Below the pieces are notes generated by a model. The model saw only the letters and a program-made list of their open reading frames with translations. It did not search any database and was not told where the DNA came from. Made by a program: the position numbers and the translations under genes. From positions 9,838,301 to 9,902,300 of the forward strand of contig NC_069010.1 in NCBI RefSeq assembly GCF_001194135.2: a DNA stretch of 64,000 nt, in the 5' to 3' direction. This DNA comes from Octopus bimaculoides. Taxonomy: Eukaryota. This document shows, one piece after another, positions 1,509 to 46,100 of the stretch; position 1 is the first letter of the stretch; every line of letters starts with the position of its first letter.

Positions 1509-1651
1509 TTAGAGCAGTACTCTAAACTACAGCTAAAAGGAGATAACTATGAATATACCGGAGGATATTGAAACTGTCTTTATAAGAACGGAAGTGTTTA
1601 GGGAGGTGCTTAGACATACAACAACAACAAAGGAACAGTTTAAAATTTATC

Positions 1652-1657
1652 TTTATT
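1652..1657 (-). promoter_or_regulatory. Candidate polyadenylation signal (AATAAA) of the Ank-RING-DD gene
   Basis: tttatt on the plus strand, about 185 nt downstream of the TGA at 1842-1844. Position is plausible but the region is AT-rich. Confidence 0.35.
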
Positions 1658-1841
1658 TCAAAAGTTAACCTCTAACAACAACGGAGCCAAACAAGTAAAG
1701 GGATTTCTTTCTGATAGATAGATCTGCTAGAAGTAGTAGCCAAATCGACCACCAGACATACCTTATCACCTTGCATTTGACCAAAAGTCTCTATTTGGTC
1801 GAGATTGACCTCAAACTAAACAACAACATTTACACAGAGCT

Positions 1842-4800
1842 TCACTTTACATCTGCTGATAGAGATTTGAGTGCATCAACACACTCAGCTTCCTTGAGAG
1901 CATCTTCAAGTGTTTTCAATGTTCGTTTCTCTAGGTCACAACTTTTAAACCATTTGTGCAACACCACGTAGCCTTGTTTCACATTGTCTTTAGAATTATC
2001 GTGAATTTCCAGTTCGGAGGTTTTAACTCCTAAGAAAATCCCTGCAAAAGATACAAAAAAAAAAGAAGAAATAATTATAACATGATATAAAAGATGTGTC
2101 CTGTAAGTTGTTCTAACAAAGAAACTCCACCAAGAGAGAAATTTTGAAAATAGTTAAAAAACATGGAAAATGTAGGACATTGTTCTCTGTTTGTAAAAAT
2201 GCTGATTAAAAACGTAACAAAGACATTGGAAAAGAAGATTAAAATGGAGAAAAAATTTTTTAAAAGTATTGAAAATTACATTTGAGAGAATTTCTGGTAA
2301 AGAGATGGCAGGAGAAATGGTTATGTAGGTGACAGCATACGAGAACCTAAAGAATCAATTAACACCATCCAAAGAGTCACATTAGGGGAATCCTCTCTTT
2401 TTGCCCTGGGGAGAATATGATATGATTGAGCAGTGAGACCTCTATTAAGCCTCTTTTTATTGAAGCATCTACATATGTGTGGTTGGACATCTTCCAATAT
2501 GTTGATATAAATAGGATCATTTATTGACTTCTTATACAATAATGCTTTCAATCATTTCAAAAAGAACCTAACTTGAAGTCTTTAACAGGAATAAAGAAAA
2601 CTTATTCTGGTTGTTAACAAATATTTCCTTCATTACAATAATTTAGCAACAGACTTACTTAAAATGTAAAACAAATAAAAACATTGTCCATTAATTAAAT
2701 TCAAATTAAGACAAACGTAAATATACAAACAAAGTTTGCTTTTAGAAGCGTTGAGATGTCTTTAGAAAGTTAAATGATTTTTTAAAATTCTCAATCGCAG
2801 AATAATGTTAATAATATAGCCTGAACAGGATAAACTACCCCTATTTTGTAGAGAAAAGTGTAGGTGGCTAGCTGTGGACACGAACTCACTCACCTGTTTA
2901 CTCTTAAACAACGAATTTTAGTTTCCAGCTCCATAAGACAATATTAACTCTATCGCGTCTTCTAATTTAGCCATTATTACCAACCTCGGTGCTAACCTTG
3001 GTGGACAATTTTTTGAAATTCCAGTAATATCAATCTCTTTAATATCTTCAGAGTTAACCTTTCAATTGGAAATTAGGAATGGAACTGGTTCTCAGCCATT
3101 TTGATAAACAAAATAGCTCAAGTGAAAGTAAACTTTATAAAAAGCAATTAGGTGTTGTCATTTTATACTCACCCACTTGCCACCAGTTACTCCCTAACTT
3201 CTTGGCCACTTTCAATAGATCCTTCTCCTTCAACTTTGGACTCTCTGAAATAAATATATTCAAATTTTGAAATTTGTAAAATTTCTTATATCTCTGTTGA
3301 TAATCTATATTTTATTATCATGCGGTATTCCTTTTATCAATGGTCCCCCCATGGCTTGGATCAACATTTTTATACTTTCTACAGTGGTACCACAACAACA
3401 TAAACCTAAGCCTTTTCTCTTTAGTAAGACATTCTACATAATCCTTACAATGTAAGTGGATGTCGTGATAGATATACCATCAAAAAGAAAAGACACATGG
3501 AACACTTTTGATTCATAAATCTGCCAGATCATGACAGCCTTGGGTCAACACAACAACAATGAAGTCAACGAGACAAACAGACAGACATCATGAAATAGTA
3601 TTCTTACCGATTCTACTTTTTCTAGTTATGTGTTTCTGACATTCAGGACATGTTTTGATACCGCATTCCTCACATATCACCACGTGTCCACATGACTGGC
3701 ATTTCAGTGTGGATGCTTTAACTTCACAAAACAGACATCTGTGGAACAAGATACAAATAATCTCATCACTAGCTTTCATCAATAACATTCATCATCATTT
3801 AACATCTGTTATCTATGCTGGTATGGGTTGGACGGTTTGACTGGGCTGGCACACTGGAAGGCTGCCCCAGGCTCTAGTTTGATTCACTTATTACAAATAT
3901 TACAGTAGTGAATATTTACGAGACACGGTAGATACCAGTAAGACTACATCACAAATGTGATGTAGTCTTACTGGTATATCTGAAGAAGTCATTGATCTAC
4001 AAACATTTTCTCATAACTTGTCCACGTGGTGGTGACTGATTGGCACAGAGAAGAGAGAGAATAAAAATGTTGGAAGACAGATAAATTCTACTGATTTCGA
4101 AATAACAATGCCAAAATATGTTCATTCCCTTCATTATTTAGTACTACAGTTTCCTATCGGTCATATATCTTTAAAAGAGGCAACTGAGAGACGTAGGTGG
4201 GGGGTGAGGTATATCTGTCAACAAAACCAGTCACGTGAATATAATCAAAATGGATGCTCCTCTTTGTTTCATCCCCTTTCAACTGCATTTTCTATTTTTT
4301 GTTCTTCTTACTTGCTCAAGACACTAGTAACAGTATAATGTATTGGTAGAATTAAAACTAAACAAGCATATAAACATGATTATGTACAAAATGGAAAATT
4401 CACTGGTTTGTTTTTTTGTCTTTGCCAGGGAATACTTACAATGATGGGAAATTGGATTTTAATTTTTCTTTCAAATCTGGGTTCTCAACGAGGTCCAATG
4501 GGTTAGCATTATTGTGATTTCTATGGTAAAAGTTGGCTCCCTGCAGAGCTAGATAAGTAGCTATTACTGCACCGGAGAGCCTGGCATTCTTTCCCAATTC
4601 AAGCATAGCACAGCACTACAAACAATGAATGTATAAAAGGGTGATTGCAGTATTACACAAATATATACATTATAAGCAAAAATCATGGCATCAAATCAAA
4701 TATAGGAAATATAAAGGAACAAATATCCCAATAATAAAACACAAAACACAACAAACCAACAAGAACTTATCTATACATGGGGCTCGATAAAGCCAACTGG

Positions 4801-7539
4801 CCATAGTAAGAGAAATATCTATGGGAGAGTATTGTACATATAAATATAACAACAACATGACAACAAACCATGTATGTTATATCAGAAGTATATCATAATA
4901 TATATGTAGGGTTATCAAGAAAGACTGGATTACTTAATGCTAAAAGTAGGGGTTTGATGGGTGTGAATTCAGACGTGACAAACTTTGTCTGTCTGTTTGT
5001 CTCTCTCACACATGCAAACAAATATTTACAAACAATTTTATAACTTACCTCGTCTAAAATGCCCAAGGCTTCACCCTCCGAATGAAACATCCCTTTCTTC
5101 ACAGCAAGGTGCAGACAATTGTTGTCATCATTGTCGACAGCATTTATATCTGCGCCATGAGAAAGTAGCTTGTGGATCATTCTGAGGTGACCCCCGGAGA
5201 TGGCTTGGAGCAAGGGTGTCATTTTGTTACAGTTCTTGATATCCACTGCCACATCACTCTTTATAGAGATTTTAAAAAAAAGAATAGAGAATGAAAATTT
5301 ATATCTTTGAAGAAACAATTTTATTTTTCATATCTTTGCATACAATTATACAATAATTTAACCCAAAATCAACATCGTATATCAAAAATATATATATATA
5401 TACTGACCTGAGTTGCTTTTGTGTTTAATATGATTTCCATCACATCTTCATAGTTCTTCCCTACAGCATAATGGAGAGGTGTGTTGCCAGACTTGTCTTG
5501 GCAGTTAATATTGGCACCCTTGGAGACCATGAGGGCCACCCCATCACACTGATGTCTGAATGGATAAAATTGACATAATTACATTAAATACACATTCTTG
5601 TTCAATATGTAAAAATCAAACATACAAACATGTCTGTCTGTACGCATTTTTTATTCTTTTAAGTTTGTCATTTGACTACGACCATGCTGCAGCACCACAT
5701 TAAAGGGTTTTGTAATCGAAGAAATCGACCCCAGGACTTATACTTTGTAAGCGTAATATTTATTCTATTGGTCTCTTTTGCTGACCTGCTAAGTTACAGG
5801 AATGTAAACACACCAACATCAGTTGCCAAGAGATGGTGGGAGGGACAAATTCACATAAATATATACATATACAATGGGCTTTTTTCAGTTTCCATCTGCT
5901 AAAGGCAAATAGAAGGCTATGTGTGTTTGCAATACAGGAAACACAGCTTGGCACCTGTGACGTTGCAACTCATTTCTACAGCTGAGTAAACTGGAGCAAC
6001 ATGAAATAAAGTGTCTTGCTCAAGAACACAACGCGCAGCCCTGTCCAGGATTCAAACTCACAACCTCATGATCGTAAGCTTGACGCTCTAACCACTGAGC
6101 CATGCGCCTTCACAATAATGAAGAGGATTCCTGGAGAAAATGAGGCAAAGATATTGTTGGTTATTATTATCGTTTTATCATCGTGTAACACTGGCACTGC
6201 TATGGCATCTTCGGACATTTAAGATGTCTGGAATTGGAAGAAATTTAGAAACAAAACAGATCTGAAGATTTGATTTATGTAATTCTTAACTTACCCAAAC
6301 ACAGCATAATGTAAAGCTGTATCACCCTCTTTGTCACTTACTTCCAAATCAGCCCCAGATTCTAACAAGAAGTTTATAAAATCAGTGTTGCCCAGTTGAC
6401 AGGCAACCATCAAATATGTCAGACCACATGAATTGGTCTCGTTAATCTGAAGTGAAGAAAAGAGAAGACATGTGAAAAATATTAAAGGGGAGAGAGAGAG
6501 AGAGAGAGGGAGAAATAGTAGAGAAGGTGCATGGGTGAGAAAAGAGGGATATGAAAGGGAAAGATGGAGAGGAAAGACGAATGCACATCCAAGTACATAT
6601 GTCATCGTCGTTTTACTTTTACTTTCCATGCTGGTCTAATTTGTAAGACCATCGGGAACATGAAACTCTGAGTAACAGTTTTTGTGATGTCTTTACAGCT
6701 TCATTAATAAAATATATATATCACCATCATCATCATCATCATCATTGTTTAACGTCTGCTTTCCATGCTAGCATGGGTTGGGTGATTTGACTGAGGACTG
6801 GTGAAACCAGATGGCAACACCAGGCTCCAATCTGATTTATATGAGTAATAAGAAAATGGAGATATTGTAGTTAATAATAGTTTATTATCATAAAAAATTG
6901 TGCCTGTATGGTAAGAAGCTTGCTTCCCAACTGATGGGCTTCTTTCAGTTTCCCTCTCCAAGGTATGGTTAAGTATTTATAAAATCTAATGATAATGAGC
7001 ATTAGAAGAAAGAAATGAAATATCATGGACAAATACCTGTTTAGTTATGAATATTTAATATTGTGTGTAAAATAACAAACAAATAAGTAACTTTGAGAAG
7101 GCAAAAACACAACACGTACTGGGCTGCATGTTGTGTTCTTGAGCAAGACACTTTACTTCATGTTGCTCCAGTTCACTCAACTGTAGAAATGAGTTGCGAA
7201 GTCACTGGTGCCAAGCAGAAGCCTTTGCCTTTCTCTTGGATAGCATCGATGGTATGGAGAGGGGAAGCTGGTATGCATGGGTGACTGCTAGTCTTCCATA
7301 AACAACCTTGCCTGGACTTGTGCTTCAGAGGGGAATTTTCTGGGTGCAATCCCCTTCATGACCAAAAGGGATCTTTACCCTAGTCAGGAATGTTTAATAT
7401 TGTGAATAAAATAATAAACAAATAAGCAAGTTTGAGAATAAACACAACAACTTACTTTCTGTGAATTGTTACGAATATATTCTTGAACATATTGAATTTC
7501 ATCAAGCAAAATTTTGCTTATATTCTTATCAACTTCCAT
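1842..7539 (-). CDS. Mind-bomb (MIB1/2)-like ankyrin repeat + RING E3 ubiquitin ligase with a C-terminal death domain, about 390 aa
   Basis: complement(join(1842..2041,3173..3244,3608..3738,4440..4615,5049..5258,5408..5555,6295..6446,7456..7539)) = 1173 nt, all junctions GT-AG and phase-consistent (the 5258 acceptor is the least certain). ATG at 7539 has an in-frame TAA 6 nt upstream. Ankyrin repeats: GLTYLMVACQLGN...GADLEVSDKEGDTALHYAVFG, GANINCQDKSGNTPLHYAVG, MTPLLQAISGGHL...GADINAVDNDDNNCLHLAV. MIB-like IATYLALQGANFYHRNHNNANPLDLVENPDLKEKL. RING: CLFC...CQSCGHVVICEECGIKTCPEC. Death domain: LLKVAKKLGSNWWQVGIFLGV...VLHKWF...RTLKTLEDALKEAEC. Confidence 0.88.
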
Positions 7540-7889
7540 CTTTTAAATGAAATATTCTAGAAAAAGAAAGAAATTAGAACAGATTTTTTAAAATTTATAA
7601 AATGAGGTGAACAGCAATACAGAGAATTTGTTGGTTCTAACATATCACATAAAATATTAGAAATATTGGAAAATCCAGTTTCGCTAAATTATTATTTATA
7701 TCTGAATGTTCTTCTTGACACTAACAAACCTAACAACGGTCATTATGTTGTGTCTCTTGGTCAGCTACATTATTCTACTTATTATAGTCTGGTTGGTTAC
7801 AATTAAATCCTGAATAATGGAATAATGTACAGTCTGTCCATCAACCAGGTGGAGAAACTGTATATCTTGAACTTGAATTTATGGATCAT

Positions 7890-9200: not shown

Positions 9201-10184
9201 TATANNNNNNNNNNNNNNNNNNNNNNNNNNNNNNNNNNNNNNNNNNNNNNNNNNNNNNNNNNNNNNNNNNNNNNNNNNNNNNNNNNNNNNNNNNNNNNNN
9301 NNNNNNNNNNNNNNNNNNNNNNNNNNNNNNNNNNNNNNNNNNNNNNNNNNNNNNNNNNNNNNNNNNNNNNNNNNNNNNNNNNNNNNNNNNNNNNNNNNNN
9401 NNNNNNNNNNNNNNNNNNNNNNNNNNNNNNNNNNNNNNNNNNNNNNNNNNNNNNNNNNNNNNNNNNNNNNNNNNNNNNNNNNNNNNNNNNNNNNNNNNNN
9501 NNNNNNNNNNNNNNNNNNNNNNNNNNNNNNNNNNNNNNNNNNNNNNNNNNNNNNNNNNNNNNNNNNNNNNNNNNNNNNNNNNNNNNNNNNNNNNNNNNNN
9601 NNNNNNNNNNNNNNNNNNNNNNNNNNNNNNNNNNNNNNNNNNNNNNNNNNNNNNNNNNNNNNNNNNNNNNNNNNNNNNNNNNNNNNNNNNNNNNNNNNNN
9701 NNNNNNNNNNNNNNNNNNNNNNNNNNNNNNNNNNNNNNNNNNNNNNNNNNNNNNNNNNNNNNNNNNNNNNNNNNNNNNNNNNNNNNNNNNNNNNNNNNNN
9801 NNNNNNNNNNNNNNNNNNNNNNNNNNNNNNNNNNNNNNNNNNNNNNNNNNNNNNNNNNNNNNNNNNNNNNNNNNNNNNNNNNNNNNNNNNNNNNNNNNNN
9901 NNNNNNNNNNNNNNNNNNNNNNNNNNNNNNNNNNNNNNNNNNNNNNNNNNNNNNNNNNNNNNNNNNNNNNNNNNNNNNNNNNNNNNNNNNNNNNNNNNNN
10001 NNNNNNNNNGAGGTCGATCTACAGATGTTGCTGTGTTTGAAAGTAAATTAGTCTGCGAGGAGATTTAGCGAATCGTTCGACTGGAGATTGCGTGTCACAG
10101 TGGTCGACCAATAACAGCAAACAGAGAGAATGGATTTCTTTCATTACACTCTCACACTCACTCTTACTCTTTCTATACTTAACT

Positions 10185-10700: not shown

Positions 10701-11171
10701 ATTTCTGTCTNNNNNNNNNNNNNNNNNNNNNNNNNNNNNNNNNNNNNNNNNNNNNNNNNNNNNNNNNNNNNNNNNNNNNNNNNNNNNNNNNNNNNNNNNN
10801 NNNNNNNNNNNNNNNNNNNNNNNNNNNNNNNNNNNNNNNNNNNNNNNNNNNNNNNNNNNNNNNNNNNNNNNNNNNNNNNNNNNNNNNNNNNNNNNNNNNN
10901 NNNNNNNNNNNNNNNNNNNNNNNNNNNNNNNNNNNNNNNNNNNNNNNNNNNNNNNNNNNNNNNNNNNNNNNNNNNNNNNNNNNNNNNNNNNNNNNNNNNN
11001 NNNNNNNNNNNNNNNNNNNNNNNNNNNNNNNNNNNNNNNNNNNNNNNNNNNNNNNNNNNNNNNNNNNNNNNNNNNNNNNNNNNNNNNNNNNNNNNNNNNN
11101 NNNNNNNNNNNNNNNNNNNNNNNNNNNNNNNNNNNNNNNNNNNNNNNNNNNNNNNNNNNNNNNNNNNNNNN

Positions 11172-11526: not shown

Positions 11527-14344
<2,818 letters not shown>

Positions 14345-43106: not shown

Positions 43107-46100
43107 ATGTCCGAACTCTGTCAACAAAGGGATGACCTGACCATCGACACAGATGTCCACCTGGTCAAAACCGACCTCTTCTCGGCTGACGGCGTTGATG
43201 ACCACTCTGTCATTGCGCAGGCACTGACGGTGTTCGAGGTGGACAGCAAGAAAGATGCTGAGGAAGAAGAGAACGTGAAGGAAGAGGAGGAGAAGAAGGC
43301 GGAGAAGGTGCAGCGACCGCAACGCAAGCGGAGAACAAGTGCGAGGAACGCTGCCAACCACACCGTCACCACGACAACCACCACCAATACCACCAACACC
43401 ACCATCAGCAACCTCTGTCCTCCTCTCACTGGGTCGANNNNNNNNNNAACACCACCATCAGCAACCTCTGTCCTCCTCTCACTGGGTCGAAGACAGTGAC
43501 GACGGTGTCATCATCGTTACAATCATCGTTAACGTCATCTTCATCATCATCACCATCACCAGCATCACTGGCGTCAGCGGTGGTGACAAAGTCATCCAAA
43601 TCATCCAAGCCATCACTCACCATCACCATTTCCACCACCAACAACACCGCCACCATCATCGCCAACAATGCTGCTGCAGCCGCTGCCGCTGCCTCCTCCT
43701 CCTCCTCCCTTGATTCCACACCCCCAGCCAGCACCACTGTTGACGCCACCACCACCACCACCACCACCTTTACCACTGTCACCGCCACCACTAACTCAAG
43801 TAGTAGTAGTAGTAGTAGTCCTACTGTTGCTACCAACACCACCATGTCAACAACAGGGACTCTCTGCGCAAATGCTGCAGCCCCCGTCTCTTCCGGCATG
43901 GAAGCTGACTCTACCAACAACAACAACAACAACAACATCACGCACACCCCTCCCACTACCACAATCAACCCCTCCACCATCTTCACCACCTCCACTGTCT
44001 CTACGTTCACTTCCACCACCGCCACCACCACGGGCACCACCTCCGTTGCCAGTACATCACCAATTGCTGTGGTGACCAGCCAACTGTCGCTGTCGTCACC
44101 GACGGCGATGGCAGCAAACAGCCAAGATTCCTTCACGCCACCTGCCCTGCAATCCCCACAGAACAGCACCTTCCCTATGTCACCGCAGGCCCAGTTTCCC
44201 GACCCCGTGCATGATCTGCCCCCCGAGTTACTCCAAGCCGGTTGGCGAAAGTTCTGGAGCAAGCGTGAGAATAGGCCTTACTTCTTTAACAAAATCACAA
44301 ACGAGTCCTTATGGGAGATGCCAGTTTTTGGCCAGGTAAGCAGCTTTCTTTTATTTTTTTATCGCCTCCAAAAGGCTTTTGTTACTTCATGTTTTCCTTC
44401 TTTGCCGCAATTATCAGTTATCAACATCATTACTTAACATCCATTTCCCCATGCTTTCTACAGCAGGATGCCTTTCCTGCCACCAACCTCTACTTATTTC
44501 CATACAAGGTAATATTTCCCAGTGATCAGGCATGTTTACACGGAAGACTGGAAGAGGAGACAACTTGTGTGATGGTGTCGTTCATTTACAACTATTACAC
44601 AATGTCAAGACAAGGAGATAGTAACACACACACAGACACACACACATGTATGTACCCTTATACCTCAGTACTACAGACTAAAAGTGGGGAATATCAGTCC
44701 GATGAAGCCGATTGTCTGTTGGTACCAACACTGAGGTTAGGATATGTTAGGAGTGACTAATATCAACAATTACATTATGAAAGACAGAGGAACAAATAGA
44801 GTACTGTACTTTTAATGAAGCCCACAATCCAGTCTGACAGTGCAAAGGACCTGTACACTGTCAATATATTCTTATACTACAGTAAATTCAATATTTTAAA
44901 ATTTTAAATCAGACTTACCTTGGGTGGTGAAGAGGTGTTGTTGATATGCTGTGATTTTGTCCACTGTTTCCAAAATCTGTTGAATGAAGCTAGTGTCCCC
45001 CGACTGTCTCCCGTGCTGGTGGCACATAAAAAGCACCCACTACACTCTCAGAGTGGTTGATGTTAGGAAGAGCATCCAGTTGTAGAAACTCTGCCAGATC
45101 AGATTGGAGCCTGGTGCAGCCTCCTGGCTTGCCAGTTCTCAGTCAAACCGTCCAACCCATACCAGCATGGAAAACAGACGTTAAACGACGATGATAATGA
45201 TGATGATGGAGGTCCATAGTACTGAGGTATGAGTGTCTATGTGTGTCTATACATGTTTATATTTTTATATTTTTATAGAGGATATGAGGAGTCTTTGTCT
45301 GGAGGAGGATCTTTATTTGTCTTCTTTTTCTGCAATTCATTGTGTAATATGTTCTTATTTATTTTCCTCCCATTTCTTCCCAGCTGGATCCTTTGACTGA
45401 CCCTTTAGGAATCAGCAGTCCTTCTTCCAGTGGGATGGTGTCCCCAGTTGGCCAGGCCCCTTTCAGCAGGTCAAGCAGTATGGAAGGGCCGTTGCCTTCG
45501 TTGCCAGTCTCTGGTGAAAAACGACGAGCGAGTTCAGAGTTATTTGCAAGTCCAACAAAACGCATGACTTTCACTTACAGGTGAGACAACCCTAAACCCT
45601 ATTCTCTCCTTCCAACACATTCAGGTTATTCAAACCGATTTCTTTATCAATTCGCATTGTCTTCAGTGAACCATTCAGCCATAGTCCAATGACTGAGAGT
45701 AGTAAATGGTGAAAGATGAAAGATTTAAAATATTTCTTCTGATCCTTGTGGTTTTCATTAATGTGTAACTGACCCTTATTTTTCAATCCCTATGCTTAAT
45801 CGTCAAAGTTTCCATCCACAAGTGAACGTCCCTTATTTTCGGCCCCTGCTAATCAATCATTGTAGTTTTCATTAACATGTAACAGACTCTTAATTTTTTT
45901 CTTCTCCTTCTGACCCTTGTCACCTTGATTAATCTCTGACGGATCCTTATTTCTAGCCCCTACTGGAATTTCGATATTGCCTCGAATGCAGTGATGTACG
46001 AGAGGGCCCCGTGTATGCTGCCTCCAGTGCTGCCTGAGATTGAACTTCTGCGTGCCCAGTTGGTGGCCAAACTGAGGATGAACTACAAATGCTTGTGTAA

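What the first reader, a model, noticed from the sequence alone, without database searches (positions are those of the whole stretch)
1842..7539. Mind-bomb-derived chimera: N-terminal substrate-binding region lost, death domain gained
Seen: the ORF starts (upstream in-frame TAA, then ATG at 7539) only 28 codons before the first clear ankyrin repeat, continues through MIB-like ankyrin repeats and the MIB-like pre-RING segment, has one RING, then a death domain. Established: MIB1/MIB2 carry N-terminal MIB/HERC2-ZZ-MIB and MIB repeat domains that bind Notch ligands, end in two or three RINGs, and have no death domain; mammalian MIB2 ubiquitylates death-receptor pathway components such as RIPK1. 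Inference: exon shuffling through phase-1 introns replaced the substrate-recognition module with a DD, retargeting the ligase to DD-containing signalling complexes.
Basis: partly seen in the sequence, partly recalled or inferred. Interest (0 to 1): 0.75.

Follow-up and report, generated by a model that had tools for sequence, protein, structure and literature searches.

The report
Octopus Mind-bomb-derived ankyrin–RING–death-domain gene
This is a real, intact octopus gene, one of dozens of octopus-only copies descended from the Notch-pathway ligase Mind bomb 2 that lost the ligand-binding front end and swapped the last RING finger for a death domain; a tidy, apparently undescribed case of exon shuffling, though this copy's remaining RING looks weak.

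Summary
Eight GT-AG exons on the minus strand (7539→1842) encode 390 aa. The product is identical to an annotated Octopus bimaculoides protein, and the exon structure is conserved in O. vulgaris (dN/dS 0.37).

Descent from Mind bomb 2 (MIB2) is supported on three counts:
- The post-ankyrin "pre-RING" segment matches only this family and true MIB proteins among 1.84 billion representatives.
- Five intron positions and phases are shared with a true octopus MIB2-like gene.
- The single RING has the spacing of MIB2 RING1.

The interpretation needs three corrections:
1. This is not a one-off chimera. At least 48 ankyrin–RING1–death-domain (DD) protein clusters exist, and every one named is from Octopus.
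2. The DD replaced the C-terminal RING2, not the N-terminal module. Paralogues without a DD still carry RING1+RING2, so the 5' truncation probably came first.
3. "Retargeted ligase" is unproven. In MIB1, constructs lacking RING3 do not self-ubiquitinate. This gene's RING is also atypical, scores below the Pfam cut-off, shows no detectable constraint, and has lost its His ligand in the orthologue.

The DD is genuine (closest solved: RIPK1 DD) and is the most constrained part. It is a two-exon, phase-1 cassette also found on an adhesion GPCR gene and as orphan copies nearby.

Verdict: a new variant of a known kind, of moderate interest.

The parts
7456..7539 (-). Exon 1 (84 nt). Holds the start codon (ATG 7539-7537) and the N-terminal capping helices of the ankyrin region (aa 1-28). 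It ends in a phase-0 intron.
   Evidence: model; identical annotated protein; paralogues P0003, P0007 and P0013 begin at the same Met; homologous to the 3' part of the true MIB2 exon that ends ...EFIKSERSK, with the same phase-0 intron.
7540..7560 (-). Conserved acceptor-like tract (ttctttctttttctag) 17 nt upstream of the ATG, with an in-frame TAA between it and the ATG. Exon 1 is probably preceded by a 5'UTR intron.
   Evidence: about 200 nt upstream is 88% identical between O. bimaculoides and O. vulgaris, and the tract and the TAA are both kept.
6295..6446 (-). Exon 2 (152 nt): ankyrin repeats. It ends in a phase-2 intron.
   Evidence: true MIB2 has a phase-2 intron in the aligned codon (ALHYSSY-R against ALHYAVF-G).
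5408..5555 (-). Exon 3 (148 nt): ankyrin repeat.
5049..5258 (-). Exon 4 (210 nt): an ankyrin repeat plus the start of the atypical MIB-type repeat. Phase-0 introns lie on both sides.
   Evidence: the true MIB2 counterpart exon is 207 nt with the same boundaries and phases.
4713..5304 (-). Gene-conversion or recent-exchange tract that covers exon 4 and its flanking intron.
   Evidence: 98.1% identity over 593 bp to the two-RING paralogue P0015 (L002 14082-14674, about 400 kb away). Neighbouring exons are only about 76% identical.
4440..4615 (-). Exon 5 (176 nt): the "pre-RING" segment, i.e. the atypical last ankyrin repeats of Mind bomb (…VIATYLALQGANFYHRNHNNANPLDLVENPDLKEKL…). It ends in a phase-2 intron.
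   Evidence: outside the family, this segment matches only true MIB proteins (octopus, beetle, vertebrate); the MIB2 counterpart exon is 173 nt, phase 2; pLDDT above 90.
3608..3738 (-). Exon 6 (131 nt): the single RING finger, of MIB2 RING1 type (C-x2-C-x11-C-x-H-x3-C-x2-C-x4-C-x2-C). It ends in a phase-1 intron.
   Evidence: All eight ligands are present, but the C6-C7 loop is 4 aa (8 in most paralogues), the near-invariant Pro before C3 is Ser, and Gln stands where most paralogues have Arg after C8. Pfam 21.6 bits against a cut-off of 27. Model pLDDT about 65.
3173..3244 (-). Exon 7 (72 nt): first exon of the death-domain (DD) cassette (helix 1 to the start of helix 2). Phase-1 introns lie on both sides.
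   Evidence: The same 72-nt exon, with the same phases, occurs in paralogue P0025 and in the adhesion GPCR gene (L007 92080-92151).
2992..3392 (-). Core of the duplicated DD-cassette unit: about 148 nt of upstream intron, exon 7, and downstream intron.
   Evidence: Homology to copies in L003, L006 and L007 begins at window 3392-3394, at 72-74% identity; homology to the window's own inverted copies begins at 3307-3318.
1842..2041 (-). Exon 8 (200 nt): the rest of the DD plus the stop codon (TGA 1844-1842).
   Evidence: dN/dS across the DD is 0.22, p = 2e-4.
1518..1841 (-). 3' UTR with an AATAAA signal (1657-1652). It is duplicated together with the DD cassette.
   Evidence: homologous to the 3' flank of paralogue P0025 (L006) and of the inverted copy at window 14345-14670.
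12914..14344 (+). Inverted orphan DD cassette. It holds a degenerate exon-7 copy (12914-12985), an intact exon-7 copy (13908-13979) and an exon-8 copy (14139-14344, stop at 14342-14344).
   Evidence: It is annotated as a 117-aa Death-only gene. No ankyrin or RING exons were found between 7600 and 12900, but that stretch contains two N gaps.

Best explanation
**What it is (shown).** This is an intact, conserved eight-exon gene of Octopus bimaculoides. It encodes a 390-aa cytosolic protein with this layout:
- an ankyrin N-cap and canonical ankyrin repeats;
- the atypical terminal ankyrin repeats that are specific to Mind bomb;
- one RING1-type zinc finger;
- a linker of about 8 residues;
- a C-terminal death domain (DD).

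**Where it came from (shown, with the order of events inferred).** It is one member of a multigene family found so far only in Octopus.
- The family descends from a 5'-truncated duplicate of a MIB2-like gene that began inside the exon encoding the ankyrin N-cap.
- Some paralogues still end in RING1+RING2, as MIB2 does.
- In the DD-bearing members, including this one, a two-exon DD cassette follows RING1 through a phase-1 intron. That is the same phase as the RING1/RING2 junction.
- The cassette was copied as genomic DNA, introns included. It also ends an adhesion GPCR gene and occurs as orphan copies, one of them 6 kb from this gene.

**How it most likely works (inferred).**
- The DD docks the protein by homotypic DD-DD contacts into oligomeric death-domain signalling assemblies of the RIPK1/PIDD/ankyrin type.
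- The ankyrin solenoid supplies a second binding surface.
- Family members with a canonical RING1 may recruit an E2.
- In this gene and its orthologues the RING is atypical and unconstrained. This copy therefore more probably acts as a DD adaptor or regulator (a scaffold, decoy or partner of active paralogues) than as a robust ligase.
- Lineage-specific expansion, turnover and gene conversion point to innate immunity or cell-death control.
For: **Gene model**
- Canonical splice sites and an in-frame 390-aa product.
- Identical to the annotated protein P0001.
- The O. vulgaris orthologue has the same exon structure. A 9-nt indel in the RING exon keeps the frame running into the DD.

**Selection (O. 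bimaculoides against O. vulgaris)**
- dS 0.21 and dN/dS 0.37 overall, p = 9e-7.
- DD 0.22 (p = 2e-4); pre-RING 0.24 (p = 0.005); ankyrin 0.52 (p = 0.025); RING 0.46 (p = 0.13, not significant).

**MIB2 descent**
- The C-terminal half found only 97 proteins among 1.84e9 representatives. Outside the family, the pre-RING part matched true MIB proteins: octopus P0169 and P0202 (P0058 and P0075 by the local segment scan), beetle P0174 and a vertebrate MIB2-like P0183.
- Five intron positions and phases are shared with the true O. vulgaris MIB2-like gene.
- The RING spacing and sequence equal MIB2 RING1, not RING2.

**Family and order of events**
- At least 48 clusters have ankyrin + pre-RING + RING + DD.
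- All 76 profile hits in 5.8e9 proteins are from Octopus (names also).
- DD-less members P0006, P0011, P0012, P0015 and P0143 keep RING1+RING2.
- None of nine family members scanned has MIB/HERC2, ZZ or SH3_15 domains.

**Exon shuffling**
- The junctions RING1/RING2 (P0015), RING1/linker (P0025) and RING1/DD (this gene) are all phase 1.
- The adhesion GPCR gene carries the same 72-nt exon plus terminal exon, with phase-1 introns and 72-73% intronic identity.
- An inverted orphan cassette lies at 12914-14344.

**DD is genuine**
- The family profile hits the RIPK1 DD at E 2.5e-10, followed by ankyrin-3, PIDD, Fas, TRADD and FADD.
- The structural model gives TM 0.75 to the RIPK1 DD.

**RING is doubtful**
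- Pfam score is below the cut-off.
- Deviations from the family consensus.
- The orthologue has CGQ where this gene has CGH.
- MIB1 lacking ccRING3 is inactive in self-ubiquitination.
Against: - No transcript, protein or interaction data were available. Splicing of exon 6 to exon 7 is inferred from annotation, conservation and frame.
- The eight zinc ligands are all present in the O. bimaculoides protein. An extra Cys (CQSC) could stand in for the lost His in the orthologue, so the finger may still fold and bind an E2.
- RING1 of MIB2 itself has not, to my knowledge, been tested alone. The MIB1 result may not transfer.
- Restriction to Octopus depends on which cephalopod proteomes are in the databases. 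Argonauta is present, but squid, cuttlefish and nautilus coverage is unknown.
- The immune or cell-death role is argued only by analogy with other expanded death-domain families.
- Two assembly gaps (9205-10009 and 10711-11171) lie upstream of the gene.
Confidence: 0.7

Rival explanations
1. The protein is an active RING E3 ligase. Its death domain (DD) brings it to DD-containing signalling complexes, whose components it ubiquitylates, much as mammalian MIB2 or cIAP1/2 act on RIPK1.
For: - All eight zinc-ligand positions are kept, as is the Pro of the CPxC motif.
- Most paralogues have a RING that passes the Pfam cut-off (about 40 bits against 27) and carry Arg after the last Cys.
- The closest solved DD is that of RIPK1.
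- Mammalian MIB2 does ubiquitylate RIPK1 and cFLIP (abstract of PMC7815719, listed).
Against: - The retained finger is RING1-type. MIB1 ANK-RING1-2 without ccRING3 shows no self-ubiquitination.
- In this gene the RING scores below the Pfam cut-off, has a shortened C6-C7 loop, and has Gln at the position that is Arg in most paralogues.
- dN/dS for the RING is 0.46 and not significantly below 1.
- The O. vulgaris and O. sinensis orthologues have lost the His ligand.
- The model is least confident in the RING, at pLDDT about 65.
Confidence: 0.3
2. The locus is a decaying or non-functional copy, or an annotation artefact, in a fast-turnover family. The open reading frame is merely young and has no function of its own.
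For: - The family shows birth-and-death dynamics.
  - O. vulgaris has a 5'-truncated copy with a stop codon in DD exon 1.
  - There are orphan DD cassettes.
  - There is a gene-conversion tract.
- The RING shows no detectable constraint.
- I could not check RNA evidence.
Against: - The ORF and all 14 splice sites are intact in both O. bimaculoides and O. vulgaris at dS 0.21.
- dN/dS is 0.37 overall (p = 9e-7) and 0.22 in the DD.
- The RING-exon indel is a multiple of three.
Confidence: 0.07
3. The resemblance to Mind bomb is superficial. Generic consensus ankyrin repeats happen to sit next to an IAP-like RING, with no common descent from MIB2.
For: - Generic ankyrin proteins and DARPins outscore MIB1 ANK in both sequence and fold searches against the PDB.
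- NCBI names for family members are inconsistent: PSMD10, ankyrin-3, RF_0381, PP6 subunit.
- IAP RINGs also hit the RING segment.
Against: - The non-consensus pre-RING segment matches only MIB proteins outside the family.
- Five intron positions and phases match the true MIB2-like gene, with exon lengths of 210 against 207 nt and 176 against 173 nt.
- The RING1 spacing and sequence match, and the DD-less paralogues keep a RING2 with MIB2-like spacing and sequence.
Confidence: 0.03
4. The gene model is 5'-incomplete. Upstream exons, perhaps hidden in the N gaps at 9205-10009 and 10711-11171, encode the MIB/HERC2-ZZ-REP region, so nothing has been lost.
For: - Two assembly gaps lie 1.7-3.6 kb upstream.
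- "aaaag|ATG" could in principle act as a splice acceptor.
Against: - Several paralogues modelled independently start at the same Met.
- None of nine family members scanned has MIB N-terminal domains.
- tblastn with MIB N-terminal regions finds nothing in the window (E > 0.4).
- In ungapped O. vulgaris sequence, the stretch just upstream of exon 1 keeps the stronger acceptor (ttctttctttttctag) followed by an in-frame TAA.
- The head-to-head neighbour begins at 11527.
Confidence: 0.03

Closest known systems
Mind bomb 2 (MIB2/skeletrophin), including the true octopus MIB2-like genes (P0058, P0075, P0169, P0202)
   Same: - The ankyrin region, including the atypical terminal repeats (the pre-RING segment).
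- A RING1-type finger directly after that region.
- Five shared intron positions and phases, and near-identical exon lengths.
   Different: - It lacks the MIB/HERC2-ZZ-MIB/HERC2 module and the MIB (SH3_15) repeats that bind Notch ligands.
- It lacks the terminal RING2.
- It has fewer ankyrin repeats.
- It carries a C-terminal death domain (DD) that no MIB has.
Octopus-restricted ankyrin–RING1–(RING2 or DD) paralogue family, auto-named MIB2-like, MIB1-like, ankyrin-3-like, PSMD10-like and so on in RefSeq and UniProt
   Same: The same architecture, the same start, the same exon boundaries and the same DD cassette. This gene is a member.
   Different: - There are no linker exons between RING1 and the DD. 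Most members have a linker of 20-110 aa.
- It has the shortest C6-C7 RING loop among the members compared.
- Its RING is below the Pfam cut-off, where typical members score about 40 bits.
- Its DD has a two-residue deletion in the H3-H4 loop, shared with one subgroup.
cIAP1/cIAP2 (BIR-UBA-CARD-RING) and the oyster IAPs with BIR, death-domain and RING architectures (Witkop et al. 2022, PMC8917759)
   Same: A zf-C3HC4_3-type RING combined with a death-fold domain in one polypeptide. In mammals, these proteins act in death-receptor complexes (from established knowledge). The oyster architectures are described in the paper read.
   Different: - The targeting domains are BIRs, not ankyrin repeats.
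- The mammalian death-fold domain is a CARD, placed before a C-terminal dimerising RING.
- The evolutionary origin is unrelated.
Ankyrin-repeat plus death-domain proteins: ANKDD1A/B, ankyrins, DAPK1, NF-kB p100/p105
   Same: Ankyrin repeats and a classical DD in one protein. The ankyrin-3 DD is the second-best solved match.
   Different: They have no RING, and their ankyrin regions are not of Mind bomb type. (This comparison is from my own knowledge of these architectures and was not tested here.)
RIPK1 death domain
   Same: Best sequence-profile match (E 2.5e-10) and best structural match (TM 0.75) among solved structures.
   Different: There is no kinase or RHIM. The similarity is at the level of the DD subfamily, and orthology is not implied.

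Membership tests
Mind bomb E3 ligases (MIB1/MIB2) | N-terminal MIB/HERC2–ZZ–MIB/HERC2 module | tested here: not met
   Pfam on the 390-aa protein finds none. None of nine family members scanned has it. tblastn with a MIB ZZ-containing N-terminus finds nothing in the window.
Mind bomb E3 ligases (MIB1/MIB2) | MIB repeats (REP; Pfam SH3_15) | tested here: not met
   Absent from the protein and from the paralogues. Present in the true octopus MIB2-like proteins P0058 and P0075. tblastn of those N-termini against the window gives E > 0.4.
Mind bomb E3 ligases (MIB1/MIB2) | Ankyrin region that ends in the atypical extended repeat and cap (the pre-RING segment) | tested here: met
   The segment matches only MIB proteins outside the family. 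It shares exon boundaries with the true MIB2-like gene. MIB1 ANK (8v0e) aligns to residues 50-249. The atypical ninth repeat is described in Cao et al..
Mind bomb E3 ligases (MIB1/MIB2) | Two or three C-terminal RINGs, the last of which carries the activity | tested here: not met
   Only a RING1-type finger is present. The RING2-type finger seen in MIB2 and in the DD-less paralogues is absent. In MIB1, activity relies on RING3.
Death domain (DD subfamily of the death-fold superfamily) | Sequence match to DD profiles | tested here: met
   Pfam Death scores 23.8 bits against a cut-off of 22.6, and paralogues score 35-45 bits. The family profile hits RIPK1, ankyrin-3, PIDD, Fas, TRADD, FADD and CRADD DDs at E from 2.5e-10 to 5e-4.
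Death domain (DD subfamily of the death-fold superfamily) | Six-helix bundle fold | tested here: met
   AlphaFold2 model of residues 296-390 has pLDDT 79. The top 17 Foldseek PDB hits are all death domains, the best being RIPK1 DD at TM 0.75 and rmsd 2.8 Å. DSSP merges helices 1 and 2 in the model, so the helix count itself is approximate.
Death domain (DD subfamily of the death-fold superfamily) | Homotypic DD–DD oligomerisation | not testable with these tools
   This needs binding or assembly assays.
RING-HC (C3HC4) E3 ubiquitin ligases | Eight cross-brace zinc ligands with permitted spacing | tested here: met
   The pattern is C258, C261, C273, H275, C279, C282, C287, C290. The C6-C7 loop is at the 4-residue minimum. 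In the O. sinensis and O. vulgaris orthologues H275 is Gln.
RING-HC (C3HC4) E3 ubiquitin ligases | Profile match above the curated threshold | tested here: not met
   zf-C3HC4_3 scores 21.6 bits against a cut-off of 27. Typical paralogues score 28-60 bits.
RING-HC (C3HC4) E3 ubiquitin ligases | E2 binding and ubiquitin-transfer activity | not testable with these tools
   The indirect evidence is unfavourable. Gln stands at the post-C8 position that is Arg in most paralogues, the RING shows no significant purifying selection, and RING1-2 of MIB1 is inactive alone.
Octopus ankyrin–RING1–DD family (MIB2-derived) | Architecture N-cap/Ank–pre-RING–RING1–DD with a shared exon plan and the two-exon phase-1 DD cassette | tested here: met

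The most novel reading that the evidence does not exclude
Octopuses have built a private, rapidly diversifying signalling toolkit from Mind bomb 2. Dozens of ankyrin–RING–death-domain proteins would act as E3 ligases or adaptors in death-domain (DD) assemblies for immunity or cell-death control. In octopus, where IAPs are least expanded among the ten molluscs surveyed in PMC8917759, they might fill the niche that expanded IAP, TRIM or DD families fill in other invertebrates. The same mobile two-exon DD cassette also couples an adhesion GPCR directly to this network.
Probability: 0.25. Interest if true: 0.65.

Novelty: new variant of a known kind. Interest (0 to 1): 0.45.

Why it matters
**As a case of domain shuffling.** The steps can be read directly from exon phases and intronic homology:
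- a 5'-truncated MIB2 duplicate;
- paralogues that still carry RING1+RING2;
- replacement of RING2 by a two-exon, phase-1 death-domain (DD) cassette;
- reuse of the same cassette on an adhesion GPCR gene, plus orphan copies.

**As a possible signalling module.** If the family is active, octopuses have a lineage-specific set of DD-docked ubiquitin ligases or adaptors. That would be a new entry point into cephalopod innate immunity and cell-death signalling. It would also offer a natural experiment on what the Mind bomb ankyrin region and RING1 do, because both are dispensable for Notch signalling in MIB1.

**As an annotation problem.** Family members are currently named MIB2, MIB1-like, ankyrin-3-like, PSMD10, RF_0381 and PP6 subunit. 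These names misdescribe them.

Tried and rejected
1. **Foldseek with the full-length model.** Generic ankyrin proteins dominate (gankyrin, DARPins) and MIB1 ANK is only rank 8. The search does not discriminate, so I relied on sequence and intron evidence instead.

2. **Orthologue look-ups.**
   - O. sinensis P0002 and the true MIB2 isoform P0058 are not on record as gene products.
   - The O. vulgaris locus L003, reached through P0046, is not the orthologue. It is a 5'-truncated duplicate with a stop codon in DD exon 1.
   - The real orthologue is at L005.

3. **Did this gene acquire its death domain (DD) independently, by recombination between a two-RING gene and a DD cassette?**
   - The NJ tree and per-exon best hits are mosaic. 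The N-terminal region and RING1 are closest to two-RING members, while the DD is closest to DD members.
   - The 5' part of intron 6 is homologous to both paralogue types. The apparent break at 3447/3443 coincides with a 3.1-kb insertion in O. vulgaris.
   - This is inconclusive, and I make no claim.

4. **Search for a decayed RING2 exon.** Only weak matches turned up at 16848-16916 and 17659-17778 on the minus strand (E 0.003-0.3). They are not in the expected position and are treated as probable chance.

5. **Literature.** Four searches for this family found no paper on an ankyrin-RING-death family or a MIB2-like expansion in cephalopods. The only analogue found was oyster IAPs with death domains.

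6. **Ankyrin or RING exons for the inverted DD-only neighbour.** None was found between 7600 and 12900. The two N gaps there prevent a firm negative.

Full report
**1. Observation**

The minus strand between 7539 and 1842 carries eight exons: 7539-7456, 6446-6295, 5555-5408, 5258-5049, 4615-4440, 3738-3608, 3244-3173 and 2041-1842. All are flanked by AG...GT. Joined, they give a 1173-nt in-frame CDS of 390 aa.

- An in-frame TAA lies two codons before the ATG.
- There are 28 codons in exon 1 before the repeats begin.
- Read-through of the RING-exon donor ends at TGA 3590-3588.

The product is 100% identical, end to end, to an annotated Octopus bimaculoides protein (P0001). NCBI names it "26S proteasome non-ATPase regulatory subunit 10" and UniRef calls it "Death domain-containing protein". 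The window is part of GCA_001194135.2, CM046630.1.

Pfam finds strong ankyrin repeats, Death at 23.8 bits (cut-off 22.6) and zf-C3HC4_3 at 21.6 bits (below the cut-off of 27).

**2. The gene is real and conserved**

O. sinensis has a 393-aa orthologue at 83-84% identity. I located the O. vulgaris orthologue (locus L005) and mapped it. It has the same eight exons, 84/152/148/210/176/140/72/200 nt, all GT-AG. The only length difference is a 9-nt indel in the RING exon, which keeps the frame running into the death-domain exons.

Nei-Gojobori estimates between the two species give dS 0.21 and dN/dS 0.37 overall (Fisher p = 9e-7). By region:

| Region | dN/dS | p |
|---|---|---|
| Death domain | 0.22 | 2e-4 |
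| Pre-RING | 0.24 | 0.005 |
| Ankyrin | 0.52 | 0.025 |
| RING | 0.46 | 0.13 (not significant) |

Exon 7 starts in phase 1 and has no start codon of its own. Constraint on the death-domain (DD) exons therefore argues that they are translated through an upstream phase-1 exon, and the RING exon is the simplest candidate. I had no RNA data to confirm this.

**3. Descent from Mind bomb 2 (MIB2)**

Three independent lines support it.

- *The pre-RING segment.* An exhaustive HMMER scan of 1.84 billion representative proteins with residues 184-390 returned only 97 hits. Outside the family, the pre-RING segment (…VIATYLALQGANFYHRNHNNANPLDLVENPDLKEKL…) matched only true MIB proteins:
  - octopus MIB2-like P0169 and P0202;
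  - a beetle MIB1-like protein with a ZZ-type zinc-finger motif (P0174);
  - a vertebrate MIB2-like protein (P0183).

  Octopus MIB2-like P0058 and P0075, found, match it in the local segment scan. This segment corresponds to the atypical terminal ankyrin repeats seen in the MIB1 ANK crystal structure (8v0e aligns to residues 50-249).

- *Shared introns.* I mapped a true O. vulgaris MIB2-like gene, which has SH3_15 MIB repeats (locus L004). It shares five intron positions and phases with this gene:
  - phase 0 before "I[N/D]…";
  - phase 2 in the codon after ALHY..[F/Y];
  - phase 0 on both sides of exon 4 (210 nt here, 207 nt there);
  - phase 2 at the end of the pre-RING exon (176 nt here, 173 nt there).

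- *RING type.* The single RING has the spacing and sequence of MIB2 RING1 (C-x2-C-x11-C-x-H-x3-C-x2-C-x7/8-C-x2-C), not RING2.

Exon 1 corresponds to the 3' part of the MIB2 exon that encodes the ankyrin N-cap. The founding duplicate was therefore truncated inside that exon.

**4. It is a family, not a one-off**

- Dozens of octopus proteins share the architecture. In the sets retrieved, at least 48 clusters carry ankyrin + pre-RING + RING + DD.
- Their RING and Death domains pass Pfam cut-offs comfortably, and none has MIB/HERC2, ZZ or SH3_15 domains.
- Several paralogues begin at the same Met as this gene.
- A profile of pre-RING+RING1+DD searched against 5.8 billion proteins gave 76 hits, all from O. 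bimaculoides, O. sinensis or O. vulgaris. Every architecture-bearing hit I could name is from Octopus.
- Argonauta hians is in the database but contributed only a DD-matching partial protein with no detected pre-RING or RING.
- Four literature searches found no description of this family.

**5. What was swapped for what**

Family members without a DD (P0006, P0011, P0012, P0015, P0143) end in RING1+RING2, like MIB2. DD-bearing members have RING1 only. The DD therefore occupies the position of RING2, and the N-terminal loss is a separate event. It is probably the earlier one, since the two-RING members already lack the N-terminal region.

The phases fit exon shuffling:
- The RING1 exon ends in phase 1 in this gene, in the two-RING paralogue P0015, and in the DD paralogue P0025.
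- The DD is always encoded by a 72-nt exon flanked by phase-1 introns, followed by a terminal exon.

The same cassette ends an adhesion GPCR gene (LRR + GPS + 7tm_2 + Death) on another chromosome. It has the same 72-nt exon and the same phases, and its intronic DNA is 72-73% identical to window 3392-2992 and 2358-2114. The cassette therefore moved as genomic DNA.

Orphan copies exist as well:
- An inverted cassette lies 6 kb from this gene, at 12914-14344.
- An array of exon-7-like copies sits in O. vulgaris locus L003.

**6. The death domain**

- A profile of 20 family DDs hits the RIPK1 DD best (E 2.5e-10), followed by ankyrin-3, PIDD, Fas, TRADD, FADD and CRADD.
- An AlphaFold2 model of residues 296-390 (pLDDT 79) has death domains as its 17 best PDB matches. 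RIPK1 DD is first, at TM 0.75 and rmsd 2.8 Å.
- It is a classical DD and the most constrained part of the protein.

**7. The RING**

All eight ligands are present in O. bimaculoides (C258, C261, C273, H275, C279, C282, C287, C290). However, the finger departs from the family in several ways:
- The C6-C7 loop is 4 residues, against 8 in most paralogues.
- The near-invariant Pro before C3 is Ser.
- An extra Cys creates a CQSC motif.
- The residue after C8 is Gln, where most paralogues have Arg.

In the O. sinensis and O. vulgaris orthologues the His ligand is Gln. Model confidence is lowest in this region, at pLDDT about 65.

Cao et al. (bioRxiv 10.1101/2024.03.01.582834) report that MIB1 ANK-RING1-2 and RING1-2 lacking ccRING3 do not self-ubiquitinate, and that activity relies solely on RING3. 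Ligase activity therefore cannot be assumed for a RING1-only protein, and least of all for this copy. One possibility is that the extra Cys turns the second zinc site into a Cys4 site and makes the His dispensable. That is my own inference and was not tested.

**8. Most likely mechanism**

- *Shown:* the architecture, the descent, the cassette structure and the pattern of constraint.
- *Inferred:*
  - The DD docks the protein into oligomeric DD assemblies.
  - The Mind-bomb-type ankyrin solenoid provides a second interaction surface.
  - Canonical paralogues may recruit an E2.
  - This copy more probably acts as an adaptor, decoy or regulator.

An immune or cell-death role is argued from the family's dynamics, by analogy with other expanded death-fold families in marine invertebrates:
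- lineage restriction;
- many paralogues in clusters;
- a truncated copy with a stop codon;
- a 593-bp gene-conversion tract at 98% identity to a paralogue 400 kb away.

**9. Comparison and novelty**

The gene fails membership of the MIB family proper. It has no MZM module, no REP and no terminal RING. It is MIB2-derived rather than a MIB.

Its nearest functional analogues are:
- RING ligases that carry a death-fold domain: cIAP1/2, and the oyster BIR-DD-RING IAPs;
- ankyrin-plus-DD proteins.

The protein itself is already in the databases under misleading automatic names. The family and its origin appear to be undescribed. I rate it a new variant of a known kind, with interest 0.45. It is a clean, testable example of exon shuffling and an octopus-specific expansion. 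Against that, domain shuffling of death domains is common in invertebrates, and the enzymatic premise is weak for this copy.

**10. Limits**

- I had no transcript or protein evidence.
- Taxon sampling of cephalopods is uncertain.
- The NJ tree is unrooted and has no support values.
- Two N gaps lie upstream of the gene.

Noticed in passing
window 12914-14670 (+): Inverted partial duplicate of this gene's 3' end. It holds a degenerate 72-nt copy of DD exon 1 (12914-12985), an intact 72-nt copy (13908-13979), an intact second DD exon (14139-14344) and a homologous 3'UTR. It is annotated as a 117-aa Death-only gene starting at 11527, and the first exon of that model appears to be only ATGG.
   Followed up: partly
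window 4713-5304 (-) and L002 14082-14674: A 593-bp tract (exon 4 plus flanking intron) is 98.1% identical to the two-RING paralogue P0015, about 400 kb away on the same scaffold. Adjacent exons are only about 76% identical. This points to recent gene conversion between family members.
   Followed up: partly
L007 92080-93925 (O. bimaculoides CM046602.1): An adhesion GPCR gene (LRR + GPS + 7tm_2; P0164/P0216) ends in the same two-exon, phase-1 death-domain cassette, with 72-73% intronic identity to this gene. A GPCR with a cytoplasmic death domain is unusual in its own right.
   Followed up: partly
L003 9978-19190 and 72000-88100 (O. vulgaris OX597843.1): A 5'-truncated copy of the gene starts in the middle of exon 5 and has a stop codon in DD exon 1. 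Further along there is an array of about six exon-7-like copies. The local annotation (P0046) fuses RING, DD, LRR and DD pieces.
   Followed up: partly
L005 7518-7607 and 7805-7888 (O. vulgaris orthologue): Exon 1 is tandemly duplicated about 290 bp apart, each copy with its conserved upstream acceptor-like tract. The O. vulgaris annotation uses yet another first exon (MINQKFSHKVK…).
   Followed up: no
window 43451-44434 (+) and 54470-55048 (+): A long proline-rich open frame contains a WW domain (Pfam 37 bits, around 44231-44323). A weak PCIF1_WW match lies 10 kb downstream. Together they suggest a PCIF1/CAPAM-like gene on the plus strand.
   Followed up: partly
window 16848-16916 (-) and 17659-17778 (-): Weak RING2-like matches (SICLSRPFNVVLQYGHS against SICMERPWNMVFECGHT; E 0.003-0.3), with the cysteines lost. 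These may be a decayed family exon or chance matches.
   Followed up: partly
window 7122-7351, 5940-6115, 5649-5921, 3776-3883 (introns of the gene): Interspersed repeats with many copies in the other octopus loci. The window also contains 14 runs of N (4842 N in total) and abundant microsatellites.
   Followed up: no
P0150 (O. sinensis, 132 aa): [quoted passage not shown] This illustrates both the RIPK1-like character of the DD and the unreliable naming.
   Followed up: no
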